DNA of 64,000 nucleotides from Haliotis rubra (lineage: Eukaryota): the NCBI RefSeq assembly GCF_003918875.1, contig NW_025765286.1, forward strand, positions 124,001 to 188,000. The letters are read 5' to 3'. Each line of letters starts with the position of its first letter. The stretch's first letter is position 1. The notes under the pieces were generated by a model. The model searched no databases, had not been told where the DNA came from, and was given only the letters and a program-made list of their open reading frames with translations. Positions 25,501 to 44,309 of this stretch are shown piece after piece. Made by a program: the position numbers and the translations under genes.

Positions 25501-27915
25501 AAGTTTAGTTGTATTTCACAGATCACAGGTTGCCAGTCACTGGAATCACCAGTTCAGCCTCAATTATTGACGAACTACTGTCATATAGCTGCAGAATTTA
25601 TTGCAGAACATACTGAATGTACAGTTGAAGAACAACTTTCCATGTAAAGTTCACTTTACCAACAGAAACTAAACTGAAGGCAATTAATGAGGCACCATTT
25701 TTTCCTGTCCAGTACCCAGATGCTAGTAAAATGCACCCAGTAAACCAGTCATGTGAATCATGATTAGGGAAGTAGGAACCTTTTTGAAGTATCCAAACCA
25801 AAGGTCATCTTGAAAGGGAAAAACATTGTCTTGCTGCTTATTTTTTGCTATATCTCATACCACAAAACTGAGTGCAGGAATGAAACTTTTTTTAAAATAA
25901 CTTTTTAGATAAAACTCAATCACAGCATGTGTGTGAACAACATCATAAACATATTGTTTTCCAATGTATGTGTTTTTTCTCCAAAACAAAATACTGAAAA
26001 CATGACAATGCAATGATATTTTCCTGTGACAGAGGTCAGTAATAATATCAAGACAATGCTTTCATTCATTCTTTACTTCCACAATGTTAGGACCAGGAAT
26101 GAGACCCAATTGATGCAATTTTGAGAAATGTGTCAATTCAACTAGCCTAAGATTTGGGGCCAAAAGTTATTACGATTTCCATACATTAAACTAAAGCTGT
26201 GTTTTGTGTGTGATAAGGTACCAAGTTTTCTGCTGATTCAATCAACACACATTACCTAAGTTGTAACTAATGCAAGTAGCTTGGTGTAACCATACAGAGG
26301 GGGCGTGGTGGGCGAGCTGGCTAAGGCGCCCGGCTAGTGATCCAGAGAGCTTGAGGTGACAGGATCAAGCCCACCTGTGACCGGGTGGAGTCAACTTTGT
26401 GTGCAGACTCTTTCACTGTTGTCACAACCCCTAGTGTACAGGACACAACCCTGTGCACTTTAAAGAACCCACGAATCTGTTGGTATATGACCAGATGGTG
26501 GCCACATGAATACGTGCAAACACCTAGTTGCAGGTACAGCAGCGTGTTGTAAACTTGGACAAAGTACTGTGACTATGTGTCCCAGTCCATCCAGCTGTGA
26601 ATGGGTACCTCGTTACCTCGGTGCACCTAGTGGTTGCAAGAGTTGTATGATCCCGAGAGAGTTGAGATTGATAATAGGACGTGACGTTAAGATTGACATC
26701 CAGTGATCGAGGGGAAAAACAAAGAGCCTTTGAGCAGCTGAGCTGGATATCTGCACTACACAAATGTTAGTATGTATGTATATGGATGCAATACTTATGA
26801 TTGGATAAAAAATATAACTGGTGGTTTGTTAAGTCATAATAAGTATTACCATGACCTGACAAAATGATCATTTGTTTTCAGCATCTGAAAATAGCTTTGA
26901 TCGTATTTGGACTAACTTGATTTGTTGCAATCACCATAATATTAAGTAACTGCTGTCAAACTGTGTGTGGATGTTTCCATAAGTCTACCATGAACATGAT
27001 GAAGTAAGCGAGGTACATTGCTGCTGATGAAGTAATTGCTAATTTTGTTTCATTATACCATTACCACTTTTCAGATGTGTTTGAAATTATCAATAACAAT
27101 TCATCAACACAGGACTTCACTGTGTCATGTGTACAGCAATATGTAACAACTGTTGTTATCATAGTCATGCTATGGCAAGAAAGATCTCAGCAAGTTAAAT
27201 GATTTTTGCTCATTAGAATAATTGAATATTAACCCAAGATTTCTCACTGATGGAGGTTATCTCTTGGGGCTGAAGAAGAGTGATAAGGCTTGAACCAACT
27301 GTCTGACATATCATAATAATCATGATTTTCTCTTGGTTTTTTTCAAACAAACTGAAGGATGCACATAAACGTAACAGTTATGTGGACCCTACTTCCACAG
27401 AGACTACATTTTTGTGTCAACCGTAAATGACAAATGCAGTCTCAAGAGATAGACACCAAACCATAGTGCATTGTTATTCATATTTACGTATTCCGATATG
27501 GTTAGAATTGCGATGAGCTGTTATGATGTCATATCTTATCTACTTCAGCCAATATTACGGTTATACACCACCCGTTTACTTGGGTTTTTTTTGTTTCAGA
27601 CAATCCCATTGTTGCATTAGAAACAACACCTTTTGTACTGTGTTGAATATATCTACACTAAAAACATTGTCATGGTTATTCAGATGACATTTCGGGTAGG
27701 GAAGTCAAAACTGCCAACCTTTACTCCAATCCAACCTCACTGTTTCTTCACTGCCGCTCTCGTGCCGAGCTGAAAAATGAATGCATACATGTAAAACCAC
27801 TCCTACAGTAAATGCGATGTTTAAAAAAACAAGTCAATATACTGAATAGTACACAATTACCTCGAAATCGGCCACTTCGAATATTACGGCCAGGGCGAAC
27901 CATCGAGGCCGCCAT
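4282..27915 (-). CDS. RICTOR: Rapamycin-insensitive companion of mTOR (mTORC2 scaffold), first 25 coding exons; gene continues beyond window start
   Basis: GT-AG exons with consistent phases (about 915 codons): 27861-27915, 27719-27769, 24428-24587, 23605-23736, 22069-22259, 20325-20497, 19689-19753, 19133-19200, 18598-18680, 18080-18188, 17075-17165, 16437-16503, 16011-16091, 15180-15280, 10119-10296, 9755-9859, 9040-9086, 8792-8927, 7825-7884, 7454-7602, 6683-6809, 6153-6317, 5742-5897, 5164-5270, 4282-4369. Peptides match Rictor: LLHEAKEVRAATLRVLR, LLNHPRTRRYI, DSWRLTEGFVAEE, FHAMKKRG, YATKLLRVLLR..WGIELLISQL, EEQLNEALTTY, VFLPVHLYGQL. Exon 18080-18188 has an in-frame TGA (see findings). 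Confidence 0.96.
7252..7417 (-). mobile_element. tRNA-derived SINE family A ((ACTC)n tail)
   Basis: B-box-like GGGTTCGTTTCCC, body ATGTGTGAAGCCCATTT, tail AATATTGCTAAAAGC..ACTCACTC; many copies in the window. Confidence 0.85.
7950..8193 (-). mobile_element. SINE family B (Nin/Deu-domain-like motif, 3' tail shared with family A)
   Basis: CCATGCTTGTCGTAAGAGGCTACTAA motif; tail TAGCTGGAATATTGCTGAGTG..ACTCACTC; copies at 23968, 34866 and 47551. The domain name is from recall of SINE core domains. Confidence 0.75.
9497..9663 (-). mobile_element. tRNA-derived SINE family A
   Basis: Full copy with A/B boxes (GGTAGCCTAGTGG, GGTTCGATTCCC) and (ACTC)n tail. Confidence 0.88.
11288..15152 (-). mobile_element. 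Decayed, internally deleted DIRS-type retrotransposon (copy 2) in RICTOR intron 14
   Basis: ITRs about 11288-11506 and 14954-15152; ICR at about 11547-11634 whose two halves are complementary to the two element termini; RT remnants (GFYSTYFL..DGEFRPIL, EKVTANPWVL) at 12007-12330; gag Cys/His remnant near 13480-13600. Confidence 0.88.
14046..14810. mobile_element. Non-autonomous Tc1/mariner (pogo-like) MITE nested in DIRS copy 2
   Basis: TA|CAGTTGAGCACCGTTGT ... ACAACGGTGCTCGACTG|TA inverted termini with TA duplication; subterminal ATATCGAG repeats. Confidence 0.8.
15427..15612. mobile_element. Small MITE-like element
   Basis: Inverted termini of about 30 bp: GTGTGGTCGAAGCAAGCCCTCTGATTGG and CCAACCAGAGGGCTTGCTTCAACCACAC. 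Confidence 0.6.
16832..17001 (-). mobile_element. tRNA-derived SINE family A ((AGTC)n tail variant)
   Basis: Full copy; the flanking TTTCAGTAGGAC is duplicated on both sides. Confidence 0.9.
17512..17860. mobile_element. Penelope-like element remnant with inverted ends and hammerhead-like core
   Basis: Inverted copies of GAAACGTGTTCCTCATAATAAAGAA..GACATCCATAAAAC at 17512-17565 and 17777-17830; minus strand reads CTGATGA-AGGAGTA-aggata-TACTCC-GAAAC. Confidence 0.65.
18915..19101. mobile_element. Tc1/mariner-type MITE with an internal SINE B fragment
   Basis: Inverted termini CAGTGAAACCCTGTTAATC and GACTAACAGGGTTCCACTG. Confidence 0.55.
19272..19518. repeat. Assembly gap (128 N) followed by a (GA)n microsatellite
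   Basis: N run at 19272-19399; GA dinucleotide run at about 19439-19518. Confidence 0.95.
21330..22020 (+). mobile_element. Helentron-associated (HINE/DINE-like) repeat with tandem subunits, interrupted by a SINE at about 21434-21722
   Basis: Two subunits (CCTTGAA..AAGGTCA.CCAAATTGACTGGTGTC..ACCAAATTTGAAGAC), a GGAC microsatellite near 21945-21960 and a 3' GTCCC...GGGAC stem-loop. This architecture is typical of mollusc HINEs (inference). Confidence 0.55.
22526..22696 (-). mobile_element. tRNA-derived SINE family A
   Basis: Full copy; flanking CCAGATAAATAAGA duplicated. Confidence 0.88.
22752..22992. mobile_element. MITE (hAT-like termini)
   Basis: CAAGGGTGGAAATAACT ... AGTTATTTCCACCCCTG; ATGTT on both sides. 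Confidence 0.65.
23010..23672. repeat. 86-bp tandem repeat derived from the RICTOR exon 4/intron 4 junction
   Basis: CTAGCAA register at 23433, 23519 and 23605 (the real exon); further decayed copies toward 23010. Confidence 0.85.
23968..24236 (+). mobile_element. SINE family B
   Basis: Same body and tail as 7950-8193, with an internal duplication of about 35 bp. Confidence 0.8.
26299..26770 (+). mobile_element. Composite tRNA SINE family D (MESC-like and CORE-like blocks)
   Basis: tRNA-like head, GAGTCAACTTTGTGTGCAGACTC block, CATCCAGCTGTGAATGGGTACC block; 3' end shared with 21590-21722 (+) and 20906-21075 (-). Domain names are from recall. Confidence 0.65.
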
Positions 27916-28100
27916 ATTGGTGGCTCCCAAAATGACGATTTTTTGGAAAGTCGCAAAATTGAAAGCCCTATTATGTTAACCTTTCACGTTGACAGCAATA
28001 CATCCGATTTTTATATCGATGTTACAAGCAATGTTTATGTTATTTGGGTAAAAAATAGTATTTTTATGTCGTAAATGATGCCGACTCGTTAACGACAATC
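27916..28100. promoter_or_regulatory. Putative bidirectional promoter between RICTOR and DFPase-like copy A
   Basis: Divergent start codons 185 bp apart (27915 minus, 28101 plus); locally CpG-richer. Confidence 0.6.
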
Positions 28101-31100
28101 ATGGCTGACTTGGGGAACATGGTCTTTCTAGCTGCTTTCACCTGTTTTTTGTTTCTGGCTCATGGGTTTGCAACTAAACATTCTTCTTGTTGTTTTTTTT
28201 TGTTTTTCTTAATGATATACTAGCATGTTTTAAATATATCCACTGATTTGTGTGTGTTGTTGTTACAATTTGATATCACTATAATTGTTTACTTTTGATG
28301 CAAACCTAACTTGGTTGAAGAGCCCGGATTTAAACCTGGAAAATGAATTCACTGAAAAGGTTCCGTAGATAGGCTGAATCATGGAGAAACCTAATTGCAA
28401 AGTTGAATCTGAAAGATGATAATTACATAATACACCTTTTCATTTTTAATAAATAATATATTGGTGAAAAAAGTTTGTAGCAGTATATGTTTTCTGCTGT
28501 GTAATTAGCAGTTGCATATGTCACATATTACCCAGGTAAATGTTCTAATGGTCTGGGGAGTGCAGGTGTAAATAGATTGAGCCTTAACATCTTTTGTTAT
28601 GAATGTTCTGTTATGTTGTCAGAATTTCCACATAGCCATATATATTTGTGAGCCAACAGAAGACATAAATGGCAGACTTACTGTACAAACATATTGAAGC
28701 ACCACTGAAGTGCTTGTTATTATTATTAGTGGTACATATTACCCGGACATATTACAGTTACTGCAATGTGCAATGCAGAGTTGCATGTCTTGGGCAAGCC
28801 ACAAACCTATGATTTCTCAGCACCATACCTGTGCTTGTGTCAATGAAAGTGTTAGCATCTGAGACCTGTAGGGCTTGGACAGGTCCAAATTTTCTGCCCA
28901 GGTACCCCACCCCCTATTACCCTACCCTACCCGGATACCCGTTATGTTAATTCCTGGCATCAAATATGCAAGAAATGGCAATATATTCTTCAGCTCGGAG
29001 GCTAAAATGTCATGGTTTGCAATGTCTTAATCATGTATTATATTCAACATAGGTAACTCTAAATTATGTCTAAATCTTCTAAGACAATATAACCTTTTAA
29101 TCATGAAAGAATAACATATTACAATGTTTAATCTGTTAGTCACATGATCTTAACAGGTCTGGGTATTGAGATGGGCTAACTCATTACCCACCCATCCCGG
29201 GTATCAGGGTTACCCGTCCCAGCCCTAGAGACCTGCATCACTTTGTGCTTTCCTTCCACAATGTTTCAGATTAGAAAACAATGCTAGAACTTCTGAAGCT
29301 GTTAATGTTGAGTACAATTTTACTCAAGTTCTTGATGGAATTCCTGGTGCTGAAGGACCGGTGTTCAACAATAGGTCGTACTTCTACATGGTTGCTCCAG
29401 AAGTTGAAAAGAATGGGAAATACGCAGGACAAGTATTAAAAGTTGACTTGGAAAAGAAACAGGTATTGTCATGGATAAGACCTTGTAGTCAAAATATTAT
29501 TCTTTACTGGACATGCCAAATATACGAGCAGACAATGGTAAAACTACAGTATGATTTCCCCAACTTAACAAGCACTCGTTAGTTCATTACTTATTGGCTG
29601 AGGTGCAGATGTGCAGAATTGATTCTCTCACTTCAGATGCAAACTTACAGTGTGGGAAGTGTGCATGATATAGCATGTATATAAATATATATCATATATT
29701 AATCACTTGAATACAATTTAAGAAACAACTGCATGAATTTGTTCTCACCAGTAGTGGCAGAGCCTCTCTTTAACTATTTCAGACAAGTGTGTTTCTTGAG
29801 CCGTCTGTCAATGGCTATGGCGGAATCCCAGCTGGTATGCAGTTTGGTAAAGATGGAACTTTTCGAGTTTCTGATATGAGACTTGGAATTCTCAAAGTCA
29901 CACCTGATGGTAACATGACACAGGTAAATATGTAGAACATAAATGAGAACATGATGATACTTATAATCTAGTTTGAGGATTCATGGAATCCTATTTATGT
30001 TGCTCAAGAATCTGATTGTTGTCTCTTGCAAAAATTTAAGTACTGGAGCCTCTGTAGCCTATGCTTCTTTGAGATGATTAATGTGGACCATGTGGTCATG
30101 TGAGACCAGATGATTGGATATCACCATCATGTTGCTACTTACCATGGTTACAGGTTGCTTTTATACAGCTAAAATATTGCGGATTGCGTCATTAGACAAT
30201 GCCCTTCACACACACTCTTTAATTGTTATGTTGGTGGTCCAGTGGACTTTCCACTCACTCACTGACTGCCTCCGTGGTGTGGTTGTTAGAGTGTCCTCCT
30301 GGAGAGCGGAAGGTCGCAGGTTCGATCCCCAGCCGCGTCATACCGAAAGATGTTAAAATATGGTACTTGTTGGTCCCTGCCTGATGCTCGGCTTTAATTG
30401 GTACAACAAGGACTGGTCGGCTTGGAGTCAGTATAATGTGTCTGAGTGGGGTATTCATGTTTAAGTGGAGCATGGTATCTTCAGTGAGCTGGCACTATAA
30501 AAGCAGCCACACATACACATGCATGCACGTTGTCATATGAGCAAAATATTCTTAAGTACAATGTTAAACCCAATTTCACATCACATCACCTCTAACTGTT
30601 ATGTGGGTTGTCCAGTGGACTTTCCACTCACTCACTCACTCACTCACTCACTCGTTCTCTCACTCACTTGTTCTCTCACTCACCATTTTACCTATATCAT
30701 TTAATCTATAAATGTGGAGTAAATAGCACTGATCGATCCTGTTGCTGAAACTCTGTGTATTTCAGCTGAGTAAGAATGACAGCGAGGGACGTCCGATGCA
30801 GGGATGTAATGACTGCATATTTGACTACCAGGGGTCACTGTGGGTCACGGCGCCAGCAGGAGAGATAGCTCCAGCTCCATACACAAGGTCCTTCCAGGTG
30901 AGACGAGGGACTTTACAATTGGGATCAGGAGGTAACTTAGACTGATAGCAAATATTAACATGTGGAATTCACTATTATATTCTTTAGATGATTATGGATT
31001 TTTGGGATACCTTGATGTGACATTTTACTGTTTTAGGATCCCTTTGGCTCCGTGTACTGCATGCTTAGAAATGGGGATGTCATAAGAGTGGACACTGGGA

Positions 31101-31950
31101 TTCGTTTCCCTAACGGTATAGCTGTGCTACACTCAGATGACGACAAACCCAGGAAACTGATTGTAGCCGAGACCCCAACAAAACTGCTGTGGGGATACGA
31201 CATCATCGAGCCCTGGAAAGGTTGCCAACAAGACAGTATGGGGGAGACTCCCTGGTAAGAAAGTGTTACCCTGAAATGTTTCACATTTTCACTGTTTTCC
31301 TATGAAACAAAATATGTTATAAGAAGGAATTCTTTTTATATTGCTAAGTTAAATTGTGTTTACATAAAGTTATTAAAAACTTTAAATGTATCATTATAAG
31401 CATTTTCAGACATGTTCATTTCACTAAAAAAACTGATCATTTATGTTCCTTTTGCTTTACCAAATATAGCAGCATGGGTCATTTTTTTTTAGATGACTTT
31501 CATTTTTCAAACTTTACGAAAATGTTTTTCCTGCTCTGATATCCATCTCACATGGTAGGGTGGGATAGCCAGGAGGTTAGAGCGTCTGTTTGTCACACTG
31601 AAGACCTGGGTTCGATTCCCCACATGGGTACAATGTGTGAAGCCCATTTCTGGTGTCCCATGCTGTGATGTTGCTGGAATATTGCTAAAATTGTTGTATA
31701 AACCATACTCACTCACTCACTCCATCTCACATGAAAAACGTCTGAGTCTGTGGCATGAAACAGCATTAACTCACTCTGTGCTATTTATGTGGTGAGGCAT
31801 GAGGGTGGAGCTGATGGGATGGACTTTGACTCCAGGATAACAATCTCCTGGTTGCGACTGGGGCAGTGGATACATAGAAGTGTTCTGTCGAGGAGGGTGG
31901 ATTTGCCACAGAAACGCATCAAGTGTCCTTTCTCCAAAGTCAGCAATATT
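28101..31950 (+). CDS. DFPase-like (SMP-30/gluconolactonase family) copy A with predicted signal peptide; 3' end damaged or truncated in this assembly
   Basis: Exons 28101-28165 (MADLGNMVFLAAFTCFLFLAHG), 29270-29462 (GIPGAEGPVF..VAPEVEKNG), 29783-29923 (VNGYGGIPAG..DMRLG), 30766-30897 (MQGCNDC), 31037-31254 (FPNGIAV..AETPT; one extra C near 31211), and about 31792-31950 (HEGGADGMDFD, several indels, cut after SNI). Strong similarity to squid DFPase motifs. Confidence 0.8.
28869..29227. mobile_element. hAT-family MITE in intron 1 of DFPase copy A
   Basis: TAGGGCT...AGCCCTA termini with a perfect 8-bp TSD, GAGACCTG. Confidence 0.85.
30267..30590 (+). mobile_element. tRNA SINE family C (V-domain-like)
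   Basis: tRNA head GGTGTGGTTGTTAGAG..GGTTCGATCCC followed by GTCATACCGAAAGATGTTAAAATATGGTAC; second copy at 53760-54090 (-). Confidence 0.75.
31555..31722 (+). mobile_element. tRNA-derived SINE family A
   Basis: Full copy; CCATCTCACATG flank duplicated. Confidence 0.85.
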
Positions 31951-31991
31951 TCATGTATAGAGTGTATTATACCGGCACGTGTGTCATACCG

Positions 31992-32714
31992 TATATGTTA
32001 CAGGGAATGTGTGAAACCAGGGATTTCATGTAATCCCTAAAAGAGTCAGTGATTTTGTGAAATCTCTGTGACCCCCAGGGATTTCAAGGGATCTCATGTA
32101 AGTACTGAAATATTGGCTCAGTGATTTCATATGAAACCCCTGGAGCCTTTATTGAAATAGAAAACACCAAATTTATGTTGCGAATACAGAGTATATGCTG
32201 ATAATATTCATCTATTTGGACAAGATAGACTGTTATGACAGCGGCTATTACACTTCAGTCCCATTTTAAAACATTTACAACGTCTCGATTTACACTGGTT
32301 ACGACCACAATATTACATTTCTGGAAACCCTGACCACCACAATTCGACTCGGAAATCACAGCAGTCCAGAGAGATACTTCTTCGTCCATTGTCACAACAT
32401 TCGCAGAGAGTGAACAAACCTTTGAGGATACCGGATTTCACGCCTTTAACAATAACAACACCAATATATAAACCACTCCCAGGTAATGGCTCTGGATCAG
32501 TGTCCATTTAAGTTGCAAACGTTACTTTCACACATTCACTGATAACCTAACAGGAGTGTTAATGTAACACCATGAACATCAGCAATTTCATGAAATCCCT
32601 TAAAATTTTAGGGAATACACGAAATCTCTTGGGGTCACAGTGATTTCACAAAATCACTGGCTCTTTTAGGGATTTCGTGAAATTCTTGGTTTCACACATT
32701 CCCTGTAACATATA
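31992..32714. mobile_element. Long-TIR foldback MITE upstream of DFPase copy B
   Basis: Inverted termini of about 130-150 bp, TATATGTTACAGGGAATGTGTGAAACCA...; duplicate at 39097-39847. Confidence 0.8.
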
Positions 32715-33457
32715 TGCGTCTTTGCTCATAGTACTGATTTTACAAAAAGTAGTTTTCATTTAATTTATTTTGGACTTTCCGAACGATTACATAAATCCAC
32801 TTGTTATGGTGTTTCCACGTATTGGTCTATTTTCATTAGTACAGATCTGTATAAGTGTCGTTGAGTGCAAGTTTTAACACTGCTCTTTAACAATCTCCGC
32901 ATATCAGTTGTGGTCCCAGTTTAAAAACGACAACAATGGCGGAAAACCCGGAAGCAGTTGTAGTAGAGCCGCAATTTTCGAAAATTGTAGATGGCTTGTT
33001 TTCGGCAGAAGGTCCAGTGTTTGACAAAAACGGGAACTTTTCATGGTAGCTCCATGTTTTTACGCATGATACCTATGGTTATCTTATGTTGGGTTGGACT
33101 AAATTGATATTTTTAGACGTGTTAGTCCAAATATGGTTAACAGAATATAATTAACATGTTTCATGTAACGTCCAATTTCATTTAGGCATAAAATTATTGT
33201 CAAATATACATGTGTCTCTCATTTGAGTATGTCCAATTTCATTTGGATGTAACTTCAAAACTAGAGACCAGTCTGACCATGATAGTATCTGCATAATATA
33301 GGCTGACATATAATGAAGCTTTTCATTTCACTTAAACCTGGATTGTGGCAGCTCAAAACTATTCATGTTTCTCATGATCTTTTATAAATCAACAATCCAT
33401 GAAAGTAAACTTATGTGACCTCATTGGCCATCTGCCACTAACAGGATTTCACTAACT

Positions 33458-33608
33458 TGTTTGAGTGGCATTTTAGAATTTAATACGAACATTATAGAAC
33501 AATTTTTATGGATAACAACTTCTTTATTTCGATAGTGCGACTTGAGCATCGAATCGTCGCAGTCACGAAATAAAGAAGTCGTTATCCATAAAAAATGTTC
33601 TATATTGT
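33458..33608. mobile_element. 151-bp palindromic Penelope-like micro-insertion
   Basis: 15-bp TSD AGGATTTCACTAACT (33443-33457 and 33609-33623); absent from the paralogous intron near 41240; inverted AATAAAGAAGTYGTTATCCATAAAAA arms. Confidence 0.75.
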
Positions 33609-34865
33609 AGGATTTCACTAACTAACCGGATTTTTGATGGCCACTTTGATCAGTTAGCATTGATGCTGATGTTGTGAGCACTGATCTTGGCCGTCAGTGC
33701 ACCATGACATGCAAATCTGATCCAGTCATTTGCTGAGGACCTTTAGTAACCCTGAGGTAATCAGTGTTAATACATATGATACATTATCCTGAGTAATACT
33801 ACAGATACTAACAACAACAACAATAATAATAATAGAATGTATGATGTACAATTTATGTGTTCGAACTCTGTTATCAAGAAAGTGAAAGTGTTAGAACCTG
33901 CACTGAATTGTCACTCCCACTGTGATTAACAAGCTGTTCCATAATATTCTTATTTTCCTTAATACTCCAACTTCTAAATACCTCTTAGAAATAAGATACA
34001 TGTTTGTTTGTGAGTAATTGTGGTTACTGCACCTGCACCAGATCCAAACTTGAAAACATGTAAACCAGTGAGGCAGACAATCATCTTTAATTATCCAGTG
34101 TATTATATTTGAAGGCCATTTGCTTATGTACCCCAACCCAATCACTACCATAGCTATGTACTTGACCCTTCATGATTTAAACAACTCAAGCTGCCTTGTG
34201 TATTACACAGCAGAGAATTTTGTGGATGGCTTTATTTAGGATTGAGATTTTGACCAAATATGGGTACAATATTCTGGATAAGATGGATGGAATTTGGGAC
34301 TGTCCTTTGCTAAAAAAGAGTGCATTTGAATTGATACAGAGAATCTAAATAGCAACTATCCAGAGGGCAAATTAGTGAACTCCATGATCTCTATGTATAT
34401 ATTCAAAACTAAGTGGATTCATTGTTATGGTATGATGTGGGTTCCATGATGTGATAGCAAGGAAACAGAATTCAATGGAAGCTGATGGAAGCAGAGCAAC
34501 TCTTAGATGTTTAGGGTTTGAAAGAAGTCAAATACTCAGACATCTGAAACTAATGATGTGCTATGTGGACGCAGGTGTGTCGCCAGGACAGCGAGGGACG
34601 TCCGATGCAGGGATGTAATGACTGCATATTTGACTACCAGGGGTCACTGTGGGTCACAGCACCAGCAGAAGAGATAGCTCCAGCTCCATTCACAAAGTCA
34701 AAGGAGGTTTGTGTGTTGTCAAGGAACGGCTTGGGATTTATCCAGACCTTCCAATAGGCTGATATGTGGCCTTGTGTATGCAGTACATGTCAAAATAATA
34801 CAAAATAATTAGATTTACATTTTTTCCAATTCTTGTTGATCTGCAAACTATTTGTGGTTTTGTTG

Positions 34866-35101
34866 ACCTGTGAAGATCTGGGTTAGAATGGATCTTCAGT
34901 AACCCGTGCTTGTCGTAAGACTCGACTAATGGGATCGGGTGGTCAGGCTGGCGGACTTGGTTGACACATGTCATCGTATCCCAATTGCGTAGATCGATGC
35001 TCATGCTGTTGATCACTGGATTGTCCGGTCCACACTCGATTATTTACAGACCGCCCCCATATAGCTGGAATATTGCTGAGTGCGGCGTAAAACTAAACTC
35101 A
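34866..35101 (+). mobile_element. SINE family B, present in copy B intron only
   Basis: Matches family B; not present in the corresponding intron of copy C. Confidence 0.85.
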
Positions 35102-35737
35102 GTGACTTTCTCAATGTTTTGTTCTTCAACAGTACTTGTTGCAACAGTGTTTACTAATAAGTTACCTCCCCTGTATTGCTGTATTGTTGATCTCTTCCAC
35201 CATTACAGGAGCCATTTGGATCAGTGTACTGCATGCTGACAAGTGGTCAAGTTGTCCGAGTGGACACTGGTATTCGTTTTCCCAACGGCATTGCAGTTCT
35301 ACATACAGATGACGGGCGTCCCAAGAAGCTGATCGTGGCAGAGACCCCCACTAAGTTGCTGTGGAGTTATGACATTGTGGAGCCAGGCAAAGTTGCCAAT
35401 AAAACTATCTGGGGACGACTATCAGGTAATAGATAGTGCTGTATGTTTGGAGCTTATACATGATCAAATCTGGACCAAACAATCCAGTGACAGCAATTAT
35501 GATCCTTGTCGTCAGAGTATGACACACTGTCAACCTGATGAAGATAATCTAGCTATCTGAAGCTAATCCAGACATTTGTCCATTTTTACAAAAGTTACAG
35601 ATCCTGACTTAATGTATTGCTTAAATGATTCTAATTTTTGTGAATATACATCGATAACACCATATTATGTCCACAACAGAAGATTTCATTTGAACAAACT
35701 TCCTTCTATGTGAGACTCAAAAGTCAATAATCAAACA

Positions 35738-35904
35738 GGGTAGTTGGGTAGCCTTGTGGTCAAAGTGTTCGCTCGTCACGCTAAAGACCCAGGTTCGATT
35801 CCCCACACGGGTACAATGTGTGAAGCCCATTTCTGGTGTCCCCCACCGTGATATTGCTGGAATATTGCTAAATGCGGTGTAAAACCATACTCACTCACTC
35901 ACTC
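35738..35904 (+). mobile_element. tRNA-derived SINE family A (duplicated at 43468-43638)
   Basis: Full copy at the same position in both duplication units. Confidence 0.85.
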
Positions 35905-38333
35905 ATTAATGAAATCTCAGCTGGTAAATCACAGTGTTAGTAGACACAAAATCTTGCATCCAATTTGCGTAAAAGGTTGGATGAAAGTAAACTGCACTGT
36001 GAATCCTGTAGGATGCAAAGATAACATTTCAATTGTGAAATTTGTTGTGAGATTTGTGATGTCCAGTAAATGTCCGTGTTTCATTTCAAACATTTCTGTG
36101 AGTAGTGTAAGGCTTCACGAGTATTTTATTTTCAATAGGATCAAGTGTATATGAACAACCCCTTCATAATTACCCAGAGTCCTTAGGACTTACAAATAGC
36201 AAGTCCCAGGTAAACCCTGGAATATTGGAAATTTAACAAGGTCAGAATATTGCTATGCTTACCCAGCTAGTAAGAACATTATGTACAACATTTGATGGGC
36301 TGCTTTATGTCAGGTGACCACGAGGGAGGCGCAGACGGACTGGACTTCGATGCAGACAACAATCTCCTGGCGGCTCACAGGGGCGGTGGATTTATTGAAG
36401 TATTCAGCTCGCAGGGAGGCCAGCCACAGAAGAGAATCAAATGCCCGTTTATGAGAACCAGCAACCTTCATTTCAAACCAAAGTCCAACACAGTGTACGT
36501 CACAGAGCATGACAATCATGGTCTATGGGAATTCAAGTGGGAAAACCAGGGGAAACCCCAAAAATGTGAGATGTTGTTTGACTAGACAGTCAAATAGACA
36601 GGAGCTCCTAGGTTGTTGTCCATAGGTGACCAAAATAGGCCAGTAGTGTGGACATCGACTAGGATGACATCTTTCTATTGTTAACCCAAATATCACATCT
36701 ATAGTGTTTAGTGGAGATGGTGCCTTATATTCATATCTTATATCCATTGCATAGCAAATACAATTGAAACCAACTGTTGTTTTTTCAGCATTAAGGGGTT
36801 TGTATTTTAATGACGCTGAACCAACTGTGATCATATAAAGAGTTTTAGAGAGTAAAATAGCTGCACCATGCCATATCACGCTTACCTCTGATAGGGAATG
36901 AAATTTTTTTAATGTGATATTTCACAATAACATGCTTAGAGAACAATGGAGAAAAACACAGTTAATTTCAGATAGTCGAATTGTTGACTTTTTCCTTATG
37001 CATGAAGAGAGTACTGTAGGTTATGTACTTCTAATAATTCACTATATGCCAAATGACATGATCAAATTGTTTTGGAGTATGGGAGTGAGACTAATTTTAG
37101 GAGGTTTCTAGCAACATTATACAGCTGTGAATATCCTGACAGTAGACTGATCATGCCATCCTTTACTTCAGCATTCCCTGACTGCAAGAAGTTGGTGCTT
37201 TCAGATATTTGATTTTCCTGCCATATGGGAACATGGTTTCTTGGATGTACAACTATGGTTGTTAAATTAAATATGTTTTATATTTATATTTCATATAATG
37301 CTTACACACTTGATCTCGTCTTAACAATGTAAAATGACATCTTTTATATCAGAATATATAGGCAACACAAAACAGACCTCTTCTTTGTGTTTTGTGTTAT
37401 TACATGATCTGAAAAATCACGGCATGTTTGAACAATCTGTTTGATGTGCAAGTTTCACTTTCACTTTGACTGATTTGGTTTGTTGATGTAATCTACAAAG
37501 AATGTTAGATCTATGTAAGAACATCAAGGAAAAGCTGGCAGCTCAAAATTCAGATTGTACCAGAGGTATCATACACTAATGCAAAAAGTCACGTGGTACG
37601 TTGCCAGCACCGACAACCTGTTTAAGATGGCTGTTTGGACAGAGATCTTTTATCCTGTCTACCCCAAAATACCCATGAGCCACTTTCCAGGATTGTGTTT
37701 CTTACTTTGTGCCCCAGTCCAGGTATATGACGATGACCTGTGATTTATTGAGTCTGTGTTACAGCAATGTTGTCTGCCCTCAGAGTATGAAGACAATTAA
37801 TAAACTAACTCACCAAATGTAACTGACCGGGTTTCTTCTTATGACAAGCTCAGGTTTGCAGGGGCTTTGTACTGTCTCTCGTACAACATTTGCCTCTTCT
37901 ATAAATGAGGCAGACCAGTGATAGAGCAACCAATCTATACCATTGGGTGTGATGACCATCTTAGGGCATCTTCCACAAAGTGGTCTTAGGACTAAGATGA
38001 CCGGCACCCCCATACTTCAACATAAAGCTATGGCAGTTGTAGCACCGCAATGAGTCCTAGTACCGACTGTTTCCAGGCAGTCCTCTTTTGATGGTAGCAC
38101 ACGGTATTGAGGATAACATTCTGCCCTGTAATCCCTGTGGGGATCCAGATATCCAGTTAAGATGCAATCTGACCTAATCATTAAACAAACACACCAGACT
38201 TGCCACATTTTAACAAGAAATGTATTCTATTATACACAGAATATGGCAAACATCCATCCAGAATATGTTATGTTGTCACACAGCTGTTGCAGCTATTCAC
38301 AGTAGGATCTGATGATATTAACAAGACCATGGT

Positions 38334-38455
38334 CTACTCAAGGGCCTTTGACAGGCTTCATAGCACTCTAAAGAAATCTGGGCTTCAGCCTTTGCTCTGT
38401 CAGAACTAGCAGAGTTGAAGTCCTGTTGTGCTTTGGCTAGACCATCTCGGATAGC
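38334..38455 (-). pseudogene. Orphan duplicate of the ATP5F1D last coding exon
   Basis: Near-identical to 47240-47362 with an intact acceptor; 1-nt deletion (GACAGG vs GACAGGG). Confidence 0.85.
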
Positions 38456-39096
38456 CTGAAAATTGATCAAGTGAAAAACTTACATGAGATACTACTACAA
38501 TCCATTTTATGACTACATAAGTTTATCTCTTTTTAAAAGCAACGAGCCATGCCATTTCAGATATGCTGTTTGTGCCAAGGAAGGGCATCCACTGACAAGG
38601 TGTTGGACAGTCTCTGTAAAATCATTGCAATTATCATTATTATTATTATAATAATAACCAAACAACGTGCAATTGTCGTTACAGAAAACTGAATCACGTC
38701 AAACCGAAAGATGCAACTTTTCTGAGGTTGAAATATATTTGTGTATGATAGAAATCAGACATTTGAAGCAAATTTGAACACACGCACGCGCACACACACC
38801 ACTGTAAGGAGACTTGCTGATATTTGGTCATCCTTCCTGGTAGTACGCGCGTCATCATGAGGACACACTTCCATGTATACAGCAAACATGTTCTAAGGGT
38901 TCAGTTTGCCTGTAAAACATTGCCTGCAAATATACACATATTATGTGAGGGCTACATTATACAGCACACATACAGCAGAACTTATATGTTACTGTGTTGA
39001 CTCATGTTGTGACATAAAGAGACAAAGGCTATATTAGAATCCGACATATGACATTTCATGTATAGAGTGTATCATACCGGCATGTATGTCATACCG

Positions 39097-39847
39097 TATA
39101 TGTTACAGGGAATGTGTGAAACCAGTGATTTCATGTAATCCCTAAAAGAGTCAGTGATTTTGTTAAATCTCTGTGACCCCCAGGGATTTCATGTATTCCC
39201 TAAAATTTCAAGGGATCTCGTGATTTTTACTGATATATTGGCTCAGTGATTTCATATGAAACCCCTGGAGCCTTTATTGAAATAGAAAACACCAAATTTA
39301 TGTTGCGAATACAGAGTATATGCTGATAACATTCATCTATTCGGACAAGATAGACTGTTATGACAGCGGCTATTACACTTCAGTCCCATTCTAAAACATT
39401 TACAACGTCTCGATTTACACTGGTTAGGACCACAATATTACATTTCTGGAAACCCTGACCACCACAACTCGACTCGGAAATCACAGCAGTCCAGAGAGAT
39501 ACTTCTTTGTCCATTGTCACAACATTCGCAGAGAGTGAACAAACCTTTGAGGATACCGGATTTCACGCCTTTAACAATAACAACACCAATATATATACCA
39601 CTCCCGGGGAATAGCTCTGGATCGGTGCATGTCCATTTAAGCTTCAAACGTTAATTTCACACATTCACTGATAGCCTAACAGGGAGTGTGTGTAATGGAA
39701 CACCATGAAAATCAGTAATTTCATCAAATCCCTTAAAACTTATGGGAATACATGAATTCTCTGGGGGTCACAGTGATTTCACAAAATCACTGACTCTTTT
39801 AGGGATTACGTGAAATCCCTGGTTTCACACATTCCCTGTAACATATA
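39097..39847. mobile_element. Long-TIR foldback MITE upstream of DFPase copy C
   Basis: Same inverted termini as 31992-32714. Confidence 0.8.
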
Positions 39848-40068
39848 TACGTCTTTGGTCCTAGTACTGATTTTACAAAGGTAGTGTTCATGTAATATTG
39901 TTTTTGACTTTCCGAACGATTACATAAATCCACTTGTTATGATGTTTCCACGTATTGGTCTATTTTCATTAGTACAGATCTGTATAAGTGTCGTTGAGTG
40001 CAAGTTTTAACACTGCGCTTTAACAGTCTCCGCATATCAGTTAAGATCCCAGTTTAGAAACGACAACA

Positions 40069-43000
40069 ATGGCGGAAAACCCGGAAGCAGTTGTAGTGGA
40101 GCCGCAATTTTCGAAAATTGTAGATGGCTTGCATGGGGCCGAAGGTCCAGTGTTTGACAGAAACGGGAACTTTTTCATGGTAGCTCCAGAAATAGAGAAA
40201 GATGGAAAATTTGCGGGACAAGTTTTGAAAGTGGACTTAATCAATAAACAGGTGCCCGTTTGTTTACTTATTATTTGCCACGCCTCCTCTTCCACGAGGT
40301 TTCAATTACACGCCCAGATACTCATGTGTAAAATAATTTTGCCTTAGCACACAATTGATTGAAAACACATGTAGGTCTTTATTTTTTAAATCCAGTTTTA
40401 CGCATGATACCTATGATTATCTCATGTTCGGTTGGACTAAATTGATCTTTTTAGACATGTTAGTCCAAATATGGTTAACAGAATATAATTAACACTGAGT
40501 TTCATGTAACGTCCAATTTCATTTAGGCATAAACTTATTGTCAAATATACATGTGTCTCTCATTTGAGTATTTCCAATTTCATTTGGATGTAACTTCAAA
40601 ACTAGAGACCGGTCTGACCATGGTAGTTATCTGCATAATATAGGCTGACATATAATGAAGCTTTTCATTTCACTTAAACCTGGATTGTGCCAGCTCAAAA
40701 CTATTTATGTTTTTCATGAGCTTTTATAAATCAATAATCCATGAAAGTAAACTTTACTCAAGTGATGCTGAAGGGGTCGTCGGCACAGGTACTACAGCGA
40801 GATACGTACCCCAGGTACGTTTCTGTATACAGATATGTACCCTGAACAAAGTCAAAGTACAGAAACGTACCCGGTACCCTAAAAGGCGGACGAGTCCATA
40901 TTCCGCAATCAAAAACCGAAACCGTATGTAGTTGTTCCCGTTCAACTGATTCCGAGTGGTATTCAAGTGCATCGCGAAATATCCGTTACTGTGTATTCTC
41001 ATTACTTACCTAACGCAATCAAATGTATCTAATACGACAGTATGACAGTTCCAGTCAAGAATACGACACAATGGGAATGGAATCCTCCTCGGGTACGTTT
41101 CTGTATTCTCATTATGGCCAACGTATGTTTCTGTATACAGAAACGTACCTGGGGTACATATCTGTAGTACCCGTGCTGACAACAACCCCTTCAGCCTGAC
41201 CATATGTGACCTCATTGGCCATTTGCCACTAACTGGATTTCACTAACTAACAGGATTTTTTTATGGCCACCTTGACGAGTTAGCATTGATGCTGATGTCG
41301 TGAGCACTGATCTTTGCCGTCAGTGCACCATAACATGCAAATCTGATCCAGTCATTTGCTGAGGACCTTTTGTAACCCTGAAGTAATCAGTGTTAATACA
41401 TATGATACATTATCATGAGTAATACTACAAATACTAACAACAACAACAATAATAATAGAATGTATGATGTACAATTTATGTGTTGGAGGCACTAGGACTG
41501 AGATGTCTACTTGGTTGTGTCTAGGCGAGTGTGCTGTGTGAGCCGGTGGTGGAGGGGGAGGGGGGAGTCCCAGCAGGCTGTCAGTGTGACAAGGAAGGGA
41601 ACCTGTGGATCGCGGACATGAGACTTGGAATCATCAAAGTCACCCAGGATGGACAGATGACACAGGTTGGTTTATTTTGTCTTATGTCCATTACTTTGGC
41701 ATTTTATCACAGCATTGAGATACTACTGTATGTTTGTACTTTAGATTATTGTGAAGGTGGGTGTTATAAGAAATACATTCTTGAAGAAAAAAGAATGCTT
41801 GAATGAACAACTTCTTTATTAAACTGAGAGCAATGTTTTGGTGTAGTTTCGAACTCTGTTATCAAGAAAGTGAACCTTCACTGAATTGTCACTCCCACTG
41901 TGATTAACAAGCTGTTCCATTATATTCTTATTTTCCTTAAAACTCCAACTTCTAAATACCTCTTAGAAATAAGATACATGTTTGTTTGTGAGTAATTGTG
42001 GTCACTGCACCTGCACCAGATCCAAACTTGAAAACATATAAATCAGTGAGGCAGACAGTCATCTTTAATGATCCAGTGTATTATATTATAATGCCATTTG
42101 CTTATGTACCCCAACCCAATCACTACCATAGCTATGTACTTGACCCTTCATGATTTAACCAACTCAAGCTGCCTTGTGTATACACAGCAGAGAATTTTGT
42201 GGATGGCTTTATTTAGGATTGAGATTTTGACCAAATATGGGTACGTTATTCTGGATAACTGAGGGTGGATTGTGGGATTGTCCTTTGCTTAAAGAATGTA
42301 TTTGAATTGATACAGAGATTCTAAATAGCAACTATCCAGAGGGCAAATTAGTGAACTCCAGGATCTCTATGTATATATATTCAAAACTAAGTGGATTGAT
42401 TGTTATGGTATGATGTGGGTCCCATGATGTGATAGCAAGGAAACAGAATTCAATGGAAGCTGATGGAAGCAGAGCAACTCTTAGATGTATAGGGTTTGAA
42501 TGAAGTCAAATACTCAGACATCTGAAACTAATGATGTGCTATGTGGACGCAGGTGTGTCGCCAGGACAGCGAGGGACGTCCGATGCAGGGATGTAATGAC
42601 TGCATATTTGACTATCAGGGGTCCCTGTGGGTCACAGCGCCAGCAGGAGAGATAGCTCCAGCTCCATACACAAGGTCAATGGAGGTTTGTGTGTTGTCAA
42701 AGACAGACTGGTGATTTATCCAGACCTTCCAATAGGCTGATATTTGGCCATGTGTGTGCAGTAATGGTCAAAATACTCTCCAAATTGGATTTAAAATTTT
42801 TCCAATTCTTTTTTATTAAAATTATAACCAATGTATGAGAATATCTGCATGTTAAACCATGGTTTTGTTCTTCAACACTGCATGTTACAGCATTAGCAGT
42901 GTTTACTAATCAGTCTCCTTCCTTCCTATTCCTCCATTATAGGAGCCATTTGGATCAGTGTACTGCATGCTGACAAGTGGTCAAGTTGTCCGAGTGGACA

Positions 43001-44309
43001 CTGGTATTCGTTTTCCCAACGGCATTGCAGTTCTACATACAGATGACGGGCGTCCCAAGAAGCTGATCGTGGCAGAGACCCCCACTAAGTTGCTGTGGAG
43101 TTATGACATTGTGGAGCCAGGCAAAGTTGCCAATAAAACTATCTGGGGACGACTATCAGGTAATAGATAGTGCTGTATGTTTGGAGCTTATACATGATCA
43201 AATCTGGACCAAACAATCCAGTGACAGCAATTATGATCCTTGTCATCAGAGTATGACACACTGTCAACCTGATGAAGATAATCTAGCTGTTTGAAGCTAA
43301 TCCAGAAATTTGTCCATTTTACAAAAGTTACAGATCCTGACCTAATGTATTGCTTAACTGATTCTAATTTTTGTGAATATACATCGATGACACCATATTA
43401 TGTCCACAACAGAAGATTTCATTTGAACAAACTTCTATGTGAGGCTCAAAAAGTCAATAATCAAACAGGGCAGTTGGGTAGCCTTGTGGTCAAAGTGTAC
43501 GCTCATCACGCTAAAGACCCGGGTTTGATTCCCCACACGGGTACAATGTGTGAAGCCCATTACTGGTGTCTTCCGCCGTGATATTGCTGGAATATTGCTA
43601 AATGCTGTGTAAATCCATACTCACTCACTCACTCACTCATTAATCAAATCTCGTTTGCCGATACATCACAGTGTTAGTAGACACAGGTAGACAATCCAAT
43701 TTTCGTAAAAGGTTGGATCAAAGTAAACTGCACTGTGAATCCTGTAGGATGCAAAGATAACATTTCAATTGTGAAATTTGTGATGTCCAGTAAATGTCCG
43801 TGTTTCATTTCAAACATTTCTGTGAGTAGTGTAAGGCTTCACGAATATTTTATTTTCAATAGGATCAAGTGTATATGAACCACCCCTTCATAATTACCCA
43901 GAGTCCCCAGGACTTAAAAATAGCAAGTCCCAGGTAAACCCTGGAATATTGGAAATTAAACAAGGGCAGAATATTGCTATGCTTACCCAGCTAGTAAGAA
44001 CATTATGTACAACATTTGATTGGCTGCTTTATGTCAGGTGACCACGAGGGAGGAGCAGACGGACTGGATTTCGATGCAGACAACAATCTCCTGGTGGCTC
44101 ACTGGGGCAGTGGATTTATTGAAGTATTCAACTCTCAGGGAGGCCAGCCACAGAAGAGAATCAAATGCCCATTTATGAGAACCAGCAACCTTCATTTCAA
44201 ACCCAAGTCCAACACAGTGTACGTCACAGAGCATGACAATCATGGTCTATGGGAATTCAAGTGGGAAAACCAGGGGAAAACCCAAAAATGTGAGATGTTG
44301 TTTGACTAG
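40069..44309 (+). CDS. Diisopropyl-fluorophosphatase (DFPase)-like protein, copy C, intact, 314 aa
   Basis: Exons 40069-40251, 41525-41665, 42553-42684, 42943-43159 and 44038-44309 total 945 nt, all GT-AG and in phase. Motifs GAEGPVFD, GCQCD, ADMRLG, DSEGRPMQGCNDC, FPNGIAV, AETPT, HEGGADGLDFD, SNLHFKP and VTEHDN correspond to squid DFPase, including positions E21, N120, N175, D229, D232, H274 and H287. Confidence 0.95.
40767..41195. mobile_element. MITE in intron 1 of DFPase copy C
   Basis: Inverted termini of about 65 bp, GCTGAAGGGGTCGTCGGCAC... and ...GTGCTGACAACAACCCCTTCAGC; absent from copy B. Confidence 0.75.

What the first reader, a model, noticed from the sequence alone, without database searches (positions are those of the whole stretch)
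28101..31950. Predicted secreted, N-glycosylated DFPase paralog with a hidden signal-peptide exon
Seen: copy A has no ATG where copy C starts. It begins at an acceptor (TTTCAG|A at 29270), and a 65-nt upstream exon (28101-28165, donor GG|GTTTGC) splices in phase to give MADLGNMVFLAAFTCFLFLAHG-LENNARTS, a hydrophobic core ending in A-x-G. The same copy has four N-x-S/T sequons that copy C lacks (NFT, NRS, NMT, NDS) and has lost four cysteines that copy C has (LCEP>FLEP, GCQC>GMQF, VCRQ>LSKN). It keeps the catalytic calcium ligands E21, N120, N175 and D229. Known: squid DFPase is a soluble enzyme with no signal peptide and no established natural substrate. Inference: three independent signatures point to a secreted/cytosolic isoenzyme pair, possibly an extracellular lactonase or phosphotriesterase for detoxification or quorum quenching in mucus or haemolymph.
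Basis: partly seen in the sequence, partly recalled or inferred. Interest (0 to 1): 0.82.

Follow-up and report, generated by a model that had tools for sequence, protein, structure and literature searches.

The report
Abalone DFPase paralogue with signal peptide
This is the blacklip abalone copy of a gene kept in four abalone species for a DFPase-type calcium enzyme with a signal-peptide first exon, so it is probably secreted. The copy in this assembly is broken at its 3' half, most likely by assembly errors.

Summary
The leader exon is real. 28101-28165 (ATG to GG|GTTTGC) joins 29270 in phase. Public gene models from Haliotis rufescens, H. cracherodii and H. asinina (336 aa each) start with the same leader. 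Across the four species the exon has no indel, and its ATG, donor and acceptor are conserved. The ancestral ATG (29281) is out of frame in all four, so an upstream start is required. dN/dS is 0.13-0.16. The A type has 4-5 N-x-S/T sequons (family median 1, maximum 3) and 5 mature cysteines (family median 9). All calcium ligands and the H287 equivalent are kept in the orthologues. Secretion is therefore a well-supported inference, but nothing here shows it directly.

Exon 5 has a +1 frameshift. The last exon has lost its acceptor and carries further indels. Homology stops at 31947, where a duplicate of copy C's upstream region begins, so 35 codons are missing, including the H287 equivalent. Short-read contigs from three other data sets carry an intact last exon, and the assembly is Nanopore-based. 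I therefore read the lesions as probable artefacts, or at most a private null allele. No RNA evidence was obtainable. The orthologues are already in RefSeq but undescribed in the searchable literature. Interest is moderate.

The parts
27913..27915 (-). Start codon of RICTOR, head-to-head with copy A, 185 nt from A's ATG
   Evidence: Searches show RICTOR called on the minus strand and ending 185 nt before the A gene in three species. The alignment shows the invariant GCCGCCAT.
28101..28165 (+). Exon 1 of copy A: 65-nt leader exon (MADLGNMVFLAAFTCFLFLAH + GG), donor GG|GTTTGC
   Evidence: Conserved without indels, with invariant ATG and donor, in H. rufescens, H. cracherodii and H. asinina. It is the same N-terminus as in P0062, P0181 and P0182.
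28518..28535 (+). 18-nt mini-exon (MSHITQ) that NCBI's H. rubra model uses instead of the leader exon; not conserved
29270..29462 (+). Exon 2 of copy A (homologue of C's first coding exon), acceptor TTTCAG|A, holds the E21 equivalent and the NFT and NRS sequons
   Evidence: There are no gaps here in the X1, X3 or X7 contigs.
29281..29283 (+). Ancestral start codon, out of frame through a one-base loss (ATGGCG>ATGC); it is GTG in H. asinina
   Evidence: alignment A6; ORF list.
29783..29923 (+). Exon 3 (141 nt), GMQF in place of GCQC, NMT sequon
30766..30897 (+). Exon 4 (132 nt), NDS sequon, N120 equivalent (GCNDC)
31037..31254 (+). Exon 5, 218 nt instead of 217: an extra C in the CCC run at 31211-31213 shifts the frame. 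The N175 equivalent lies before the shift.
31791..31947 (+). Remnant of the last exon: acceptor CAG lost, five further 1-2-nt indels, D229 motif present but out of frame; ends at codon ~301 of 336
   Evidence: The X1, X4 and X7 contigs carry 8 gap letters here, and for X1 these restore the acceptor and frame.
31948..38525 (+). Copy B unit: an 88-95% identical duplicate of the copy C unit (39055-47432) that starts exactly where A's exon breaks off. B lacks half of its first exon and all of its second.
31992..32714 (.). Transposon-like element with 94-nt inverted ends, also present upstream of C
   Evidence: Very high read depth.
40069..44309 (+). Copy C: intact five-exon leaderless paralogue, 314 aa, identical to H. 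rubra XP_046558954.1

Best explanation
The stretch is the Haliotis rubra copy of an abalone-specific paralogue ('A type') of the DFPase / SGL family, a calcium-dependent six-bladed beta-propeller hydrolase.

How the gene arose (shown by comparison):
- A duplication occurred inside the abalone lineage.
- A one-base loss then put the old start codon out of frame.
- The gene now starts at a 65-nt exon 185 nt from the RICTOR start codon, in head-to-head orientation.
- That exon is spliced in phase onto the old first exon.

What the protein most likely does (inferred):
- The exon encodes a 22-residue leader: a short n-region, a 14-residue hydrophobic core, and small residues at -3 and -1 (A/S-H-G).
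- The protein most likely enters the ER, loses the leader, and is N-glycosylated at three or four lineage-specific sequons.
- It would then work outside the cell with the same calcium site as squid DFPase.
- Its substrate is unknown. A lactone or phosphoester hydrolase is the family-based guess.

The copy in this window:
- As assembled, it cannot make this protein. It has a +1 frameshift in exon 5, a lost acceptor and five indels in the last exon, and 35 codons replaced at 31948 by the copy B unit.
- These lesions are most likely errors of the Nanopore-based assembly, or at most a private null haplotype. They are not an old pseudogene.
For: Orthologues:
- RefSeq proteins from three other Haliotis species are 336 aa and start MADLGN/MADLRN...FLFLSHG.
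- Their genomic exons are 65/193/141/132/217/263 nt in all three.

Splice signals and start:
- The leader exon has no indel, and its ATG and donor are invariant.
- The acceptor is conserved, and the old ATG is out of frame or lost.
- No in-frame ATG lies upstream of the acceptor. The first internal Met lies after the E21 equivalent.

Selection and history:
- dN/dS is 0.13-0.16 for all pairs, including the window copy. For the leader it is 0.16-0.48, with dS up to 0.8.
- A and C are sister clades within Haliotis (support 99/97). The A stem is 0.20 against 0.11 for C.

Protein features:
- E = 9e-136 to squid DFPase. E21, N120, N175, D229, H274 and H287 are kept in the orthologues.
- In the AlphaFold model, residues 31-336 have pLDDT 94-98, and residues 1-30 are unstructured.
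- The A type has 4-5 sequons against a family median of 1 and maximum of 3. It has 5 mature cysteines against a median of 9.
- Only 5 of 124 family members have a hydrophobic N-terminus.

Lesions as artefacts:
- The X1, X4 and X7 contigs all stop matching at exactly 31947. Each carries 8 gap letters in the last exon.
- For X1 these give GEHEGGADGMDFDEDNNLLVAHWGSGYIEVFGPEGGLPQKRIKCPFSKVSN, one residue different from the orthologues.
- Only 3 substitutions accompany the 6 indels.
- The assembly used about 30x Nanopore reads, wtdbg/DBG2OLC/QuickMerge, and one Pilon round (PMC6774278).
Against: - No RNA run holds the locus, so splicing of 28165 to 29270 and expression are not shown.
- No cDNA-derived A-type protein is in the protein collection.
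- The three RefSeq models are automated and may depend on each other.
- The leader's n-region has no positive charge in three of the four species.
- The mature protein has an odd number of cysteines.
- I could not see whether the exon 5 frameshift is absent from reads. The relevant rows were cut, and searches found nothing.
- The breakpoint at 31947/31948 is sharp and coincides with the edge of a real-looking 88-95% duplicate. This would also fit a genuine rearrangement.
Confidence: 0.7

Rival explanations
1. Copy A is a genuine pseudogene or null allele in H. rubra. Under this reading, the duplication that created copy B cut off the end of A's last exon, and frameshifts followed.
For: All lesions are in the window as given. 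The break at 31947 coincides exactly with the start of the B unit, which is 88-95% identical to the C unit and so looks like an old duplicate rather than a trivial assembly repeat. NCBI's annotation skipped A's exons 4-6.
Against: - dN/dS of the window copy equals that of the intact orthologues (0.15). I estimate that neutral drift since a B/C split of about 8% divergence would have given about 49 non-synonymous changes, where about 30 are seen.
- Six indels come with only three substitutions, all next to the indels. That is not what neutral decay looks like.
- None of the three read sets that cover the place shows the window's form.
- Other notes on this genome report single-base frameshifts in otherwise conserved genes (leads only).
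Confidence: 0.25
2. The leader is real but is not a cleaved secretory signal. It might anchor the enzyme in a membrane, or keep it in the ER or in a lysosome-like compartment.
For: The n-region is acidic or neutral in three species. No predictor or experiment was available. The odd cysteine count is not typical of a fully disulfide-bonded secreted protein.
Against: The hydrophobic core is only 11-14 residues, which is short for a membrane anchor. Small residues at -3 and -1 are conserved (A/S-H-G). There is no KDEL-like C-terminus (...KPQYFEV). Three new sequons and the loss of five otherwise well-conserved cysteines fit passage through the secretory pathway.
Confidence: 0.15
3. In H. rubra the working gene is an A-B fusion, as in NCBI model XP_046558960.1. 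A's front exons would be spliced to B's back exons, possibly still behind the leader exon.
For: The model maps exactly onto window pieces 28518-28535, 29229-29462, 29786-29923, 34578-34706, 35215-35427 and 36325-36582. All of these junctions are phase 0, so the fusion reads through.
Against: Its first mini-exon and the read-through of the acceptor are not conserved: there is a 4-nt indel in H. asinina and unrelated sequence in the other two species. B carries HRGGG in place of the conserved HWGSG and has lost two exon segments. No RNA evidence is available. Automated pipelines build such chimeras around frameshifted exons.
Confidence: 0.08
4. The leader exon is a chance ORF, or an annotation artefact in the RICTOR promoter region, and is not part of the gene.
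For: In one genome such an ORF is not rare (about 0.34 per kb). The donor GTTTGC is weak. The region is conserved anyway, as a shared promoter.
Against: There is no indel in 65 nt across four species, while the intron just after it is full of indels. Many changes are synonymous or keep hydrophobicity. No other start is available for an ORF under purifying selection.
Confidence: 0.03

Closest known systems
Squid diisopropyl-fluorophosphatase (Loligo vulgaris DFPase, PDB 1E1A and others)
   Same: About 60% identical over 302 residues (E = 9e-136). The six-bladed propeller and the calcium ligands E21/N120/N175/D229 plus H274 and H287 are kept in the A-type orthologues.
   Different: DFPase has no leader. 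The A type has a 22-residue hydrophobic leader on a separate exon, 3-4 extra N-x-S/T sequons and 5 rather than 8-9 cysteines, with GMQF for GCQC next to the active site.
Abalone leaderless paralogue (copy C here; XP_046558954.1 and its orthologues)
   Same: Sister clade and same intron positions and phases. It lies downstream on the same strand, in this window and in the H. asinina locus.
   Different: It starts at the ancestral ATG, and has one sequon and nine cysteines. About 71-73% identical to the A type.
RefSeq models XP_046330990.2 (H. rufescens), XP_071119472.1 (H. cracherodii), XP_067678135.1 (H. asinina), all 'diisopropyl-fluorophosphatase-like'
   Same: Direct orthologues of the window's copy A, with the same leader, the same exon structure and the same RICTOR neighbour.
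   Different: They are intact (336 aa). The window's copy is frameshifted and truncated as assembled, and H. rubra's own RefSeq model is an A-B chimera without the leader.
Other calcium-dependent six-bladed propeller hydrolases that carry an N-terminal signal (serum paraoxonase PON1; strictosidine synthase and some bacterial gluconolactonases in the SGL/strictosidine-synthase-like group); from my own knowledge, not tested here
   Same: Same general fold class, and in some cases a metal-dependent lactonase or phosphotriesterase activity, combined with entry into the secretory pathway.
   Different: They are distant or separate families. None belongs to the animal DFPase clade, and none is known to have gained its signal through a new first exon after loss of the old start.

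Membership tests
DFPase / SMP-30-gluconolactonase-LRE (SGL, PF08450) propeller hydrolases | Full-length sequence similarity to characterised DFPase | tested here: met
   Window exon 2 against PDB DFPase: E = 1e-13. Orthologue P0062: E = 9e-136 over residues 34-335. PF08450 is precomputed for all full-length relatives.
DFPase / SMP-30-gluconolactonase-LRE (SGL, PF08450) propeller hydrolases | Catalytic calcium ligands E21, N120, N175, D229 and H287, in the A-type orthologues | tested here: met
   They map to E50, N148, N203, D257 and H315 of P0062. These are invariant or nearly invariant in 47 sequences.
DFPase / SMP-30-gluconolactonase-LRE (SGL, PF08450) propeller hydrolases | The same residues readable in one frame in the window's copy A | tested here: not met
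   The E21, N120 and N175 equivalents are in frame. The D229 motif lies after the exon 5 frameshift and in a last exon without an acceptor. The H274 and H287 equivalents are in the missing 35 codons.
DFPase / SMP-30-gluconolactonase-LRE (SGL, PF08450) propeller hydrolases | Six-bladed beta-propeller fold | tested here: met
   The AlphaFold2 model of P0062 has mean pLDDT 92.7 and pTM 0.88, and is all-beta from residue 33. No separate fold search was run, because the sequence match to solved DFPase is decisive.
DFPase / SMP-30-gluconolactonase-LRE (SGL, PF08450) propeller hydrolases | Calcium-dependent hydrolysis of DFP, lactones or related esters | not testable with these tools
   Needs expression and enzyme assays.
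Secreted proteins with a cleavable N-terminal signal peptide | Tripartite leader: short n-region, hydrophobic core of 7-15 residues, small residues at -3 and -1 | tested here: met
   By inspection and hydropathy only. The Kyte-Doolittle maximum is 2.3-2.7 over 11 residues. The core is 11-14 residues, and A/S-H-G precedes the mature end in four species. No SignalP-type predictor was available.
Secreted proteins with a cleavable N-terminal signal peptide | Secretory-pathway signatures in the mature part (gain of N-glycosylation sequons, loss of free cysteines) | tested here: met
   4-5 sequons against a median of 1 and maximum of 3 in 42 leaderless relatives. 5 mature cysteines against a median of 9 and minimum of 5. 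This is suggestive, not proof.
Secreted proteins with a cleavable N-terminal signal peptide | Transcript that joins the leader exon to exon 2; protein found outside cells | not testable with these tools
   No RNA run holds the locus. No paper mentions DFPase in abalone.
Pseudogene (for the window's copy) | Frame-disrupting lesions | tested here: met
Pseudogene (for the window's copy) | Relaxed selection on substitutions | tested here: not met
   dN/dS of the window copy against the orthologues is 0.13-0.16, the same as among the intact orthologues.
Pseudogene (for the window's copy) | Lesions seen in independent sequence data | tested here: not met
   For the last exon, X1, X4 and X7 each carry 8 gap letters relative to the window's form; for X1 these restore the frame, while the X4 and X7 reconstructions were incomplete. 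All three leave the window at 31947. For exon 5 the data were inconclusive.

The most novel reading that the evidence does not exclude
Abalone make the first extracellular, glycosylated member of the animal DFPase clade. On this reading it was created when a duplicate lost its start codon and captured a new signal-peptide exon from the divergent side of the RICTOR promoter. An extracellular location would narrow the search for the long-unknown natural substrate of DFPase-type enzymes to compounds met in mucus, gut fluid or haemolymph, such as algal or bacterial lactones and phosphoesters.
Probability: 0.45. Interest if true: 0.6.

Novelty: new variant of a known kind. Interest (0 to 1): 0.38.

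Why it matters
DFPase is heavily studied as a nerve-agent-degrading enzyme and as a protein-engineering scaffold, yet its natural role is unknown, and the characterised squid enzyme has no leader. A conserved, selected paralogue that has been re-routed into the secretory pathway would be a natural experiment on what this fold does outside the cell. It is easy to express and assay. It is also a clean example of how a protein changes compartment: the old ATG is lost by a frameshift, and a new first exon is recruited next to a neighbouring gene's promoter. For annotation, the H. rubra reference mis-models this locus as an A-B chimera, and its apparent pseudogene state should not be taken at face value.

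Tried and rejected
- RNA evidence: two searches for sequencing runs found only DNA-like holders. The four runs laid were all genomic contigs, so the 28165-29270 junction could not be tested.
- Exon 5 frameshift in independent data: the relevant indel rows were cut from the output. An exact look-up of the frameshifted exon 5 ORF found nothing. A homologue search with exon 5 returned nothing closer than 76%.
- Representative search with exon 2: it returned mostly exon-sized ORFs that start at the ordinary ATG, and no A-type leader. The orthologues came from the word-based searches and the cluster look-up.
- Pfam on single exons: too short to pass thresholds.
- A tblastx check of RICTOR exons for assembly frameshifts: too few exons to give an error rate.
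- Leftover 3' end of copy A: searched for elsewhere in the window and in the orthologues' downstream regions; none found. An apparent 'TVYVT' match at 31985-32002 is part of the inverted end of a transposon-like element, not exon sequence.
- NCBI's alternative first exon (MSHITQ plus read-through): rejected as not conserved.
- Literature: five searches found no paper on DFPase in abalone or on a secreted mollusc DFPase.
- ARAGORN found no tRNA-like gene in the intronic high-copy repeats.
Full report
**What is in the window**

The window is from the Haliotis rubra reference assembly. My five-exon model of copy C (40069-44309) translates exactly to XP_046558954.1. XP_046558960.1 maps exactly onto pieces of copies A and B. 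Three DFPase-like copies lie in tandem on the + strand:
- A: 28101 to about 31947.
- B: 32936-36582, damaged.
- C: intact, 314 aa.
Exon 2 of A matches solved squid DFPase at E = 1e-13.

**The observation**

- The ATG is at 28101, and the 65-nt exon ends with donor GG|GTTTGC.
- The acceptor is TTTCAG|A at 29270, and the in-phase join gives MADLGNMVFLAAFTCFLFLAHG-LENNARTS.
- The four sequons and the cysteine replacements are there.
- The 'missing ATG' is really an ATG that persists at 29281-29283. A one-base loss relative to copy C (ATGGCG to ATGC) has left it out of frame.

Taken alone, an in-phase hydrophobic ATG-to-GT exon is not rare in this DNA. I counted about 0.34 per kb, against a 1.35-kb search space. 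The sequence of one genome therefore cannot establish the exon.

**Evidence from relatives**

A word-based homologue search and a cluster look-up found 336-aa RefSeq proteins in H. rufescens, H. cracherodii and H. asinina. All three begin MADLGNIVHL(V/A)ALSCFLFLSHG or MADLRNMDLLAALSCFLFLSHG and continue into the DFPase domain.

I fetched their loci and rebuilt the exons.
- Exon sizes are 65/193/141/132/217/263 nt in all three.
- In each species the gene lies head-to-head with RICTOR, with 185 nt between the two start codons. The window has the same arrangement (RICTOR ATG at 27915-27913).
- The leader exon aligns across the four species with no indel and with invariant ATG and donor. The intron just after it is full of indels.
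- The acceptor is conserved. The ancestral ATG is out of frame in all four species and has become GTG in H. asinina.
- In no species is there an in-frame ATG in the read-through upstream of the acceptor. The first internal Met lies after the E21 equivalent. An ORF under selection therefore needs this upstream exon.

**Selection and history**

- Pairwise dN/dS is 0.13-0.16 for the whole coding sequence. For the leader it is 0.16-0.48, with dS up to 0.8.
- In a maximum-likelihood tree, A and C are sister clades within Haliotis (support 99/97). Each is monophyletic at 100%.
- The duplication therefore predates the split of H. asinina from the other species. The A stem is about twice as long as the C stem (0.20 against 0.11).

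**Protein features**

- P0062 matches squid DFPase at E = 9e-136. E21, N120, N175, D229, H274 and H287 map to conserved residues.
- In an AlphaFold2 model, residues 31-336 have pLDDT 94-98 and form an all-beta domain. Residues 1-30 are unstructured.
- The A type has 4-5 N-x-S/T sequons. NFT, NRS and NDS are present in all four species, and NMT in two. Forty-two leaderless relatives have a median of 1 and a maximum of 3.
- The mature A type has 5 cysteines, against a family median of 9 and minimum of 5.
- Only 5 of 124 family members in my set have a hydrophobic N-terminus, and three of those are the abalone A types.

Together these support entry into the secretory pathway. That remains an inference. 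No signal-peptide predictor, RNA data or proteome was available.

The window's copy A does not read through.
- Exon 5 is 218 nt. An extra C in the CCC run at 31211-31213 shifts the frame into a stop at the donor.
- The last exon has TGTGG where B, C and all orthologues have TGTCAG, and it has five more 1-2-nt indels.
- Similarity to the orthologues ends at 31947. From 31948 the sequence is an 88-95% identical copy of the region that starts 1 kb upstream of copy C (39055 onward). This is the start of the copy B unit, 31948-38525.
- The last 35 codons, which include the H274 and H287 equivalents, are nowhere in the window.
- NCBI's H. rubra model avoids these exons. It joins a non-conserved mini-exon (28518-28535) and a read-through of the acceptor to A exons 2-3, and then to B's back exons.

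**Are the lesions real?**

All four runs I could lay are genomic contigs. Three of them cover the last exon.
- X1 is about 1% different from the window, and in one intron piece it shares a haplotype identical to the window. It is probably the same species.
- X4 and X7 are about 3% different and are labelled as other organisms.
- Each of the three has one contig that differs from the window by 8 gap letters between 31790 and 31902.
- All three contigs stop matching at exactly 31947 and then run on for 114-411 letters unlike the window.

I applied X1's listed differences to the window sequence.
- They restore the CAG acceptor and an open frame: GEHEGGADGMDFDEDNNLLVAHWGSGYIEVFGPEGGLPQKRIKCPFSKVSN.
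- This differs at one residue from the orthologues.
- For X4 and X7, only some of the 8 gap letters were shown in the output. My reconstructions for those two runs are therefore incomplete.

Three further points bear on the question.
- Only three substitutions, all adjacent to indels, accompany the six indel events. That ratio does not fit neutral decay.
- The window copy's dN/dS shows no relaxation.
- The assembly was built from about 30x Nanopore reads with wtdbg and DBG2OLC, merged with QuickMerge, and polished with a single Pilon round (PMC6774278).

Notes by other agents on this genome also mention single-base frameshifts in conserved genes. I treat those as leads only.

I therefore put about 0.65-0.7 on assembly artefact, or at least 'not the species' normal allele'. 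I put about 0.25 on a genuine null haplotype created by the B duplication. I could not determine whether the exon 5 frameshift is absent from reads.

**Verdict**

- The leader-exon observation is correct, and conservation supports it strongly.
- The 'secreted, glycosylated paralogue' reading is the best explanation for the gene family, but it is unproven.
- The particular copy in this window is defective as assembled.
- The orthologues are already in RefSeq as 'diisopropyl-fluorophosphatase-like', so the gene model is not new. I found no paper that describes a DFPase in abalone or a secreted mollusc DFPase.
- I rate it a new variant of a known kind, with moderate interest.

Noticed in passing
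window 32936-36582 (copy B): Copy B is a damaged duplicate of copy C. Its first exon stops after 36 codons at 33040, and the second exon is missing. The conserved HWGSG motif reads HRGGG. The rest is 88-100% identical to C at protein level. NCBI fuses its back exons to copy A.
   Followed up: partly
window 31992-32714 and 39097-39847: Two copies of a transposon-like element of about 720 bp with 94-nt inverted ends (91% complementary), one upstream of B and one upstream of C. Read depth over it is tens of thousands, so it is a high-copy family.
   Followed up: partly
window 30252-30690 and 31575-31725: Intronic repeats with read depths of 10^5 to 10^7 and (CACT)n tails (TRF array at 30625-30683). 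They look like the abundant abalone SINE. ARAGORN finds no tRNA gene in them.
   Followed up: partly
window 27817-28165: RICTOR and copy A are head-to-head with only 185 nt between their start codons. The roughly 60 nt before A's ATG are almost invariant in four abalone species. This suggests a shared bidirectional promoter, and possibly small upstream ORFs (ATGTCGTAA).
   Followed up: partly
window 23388-23672: An 86-nt tandem repeat (3.3 copies, 90% matches) in a RICTOR intron. The orthologous introns of H. rufescens and H. cracherodii hold much longer arrays of the same unit.
   Followed up: no
   Followed up: no
P0152 and P0134 (proteins from public assemblies, origin not named): Two other DFPase-family proteins, from unnamed sources, also carry hydrophobic N-terminal extensions. 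Leader-bearing forms may therefore have arisen more than once.
   Followed up: no
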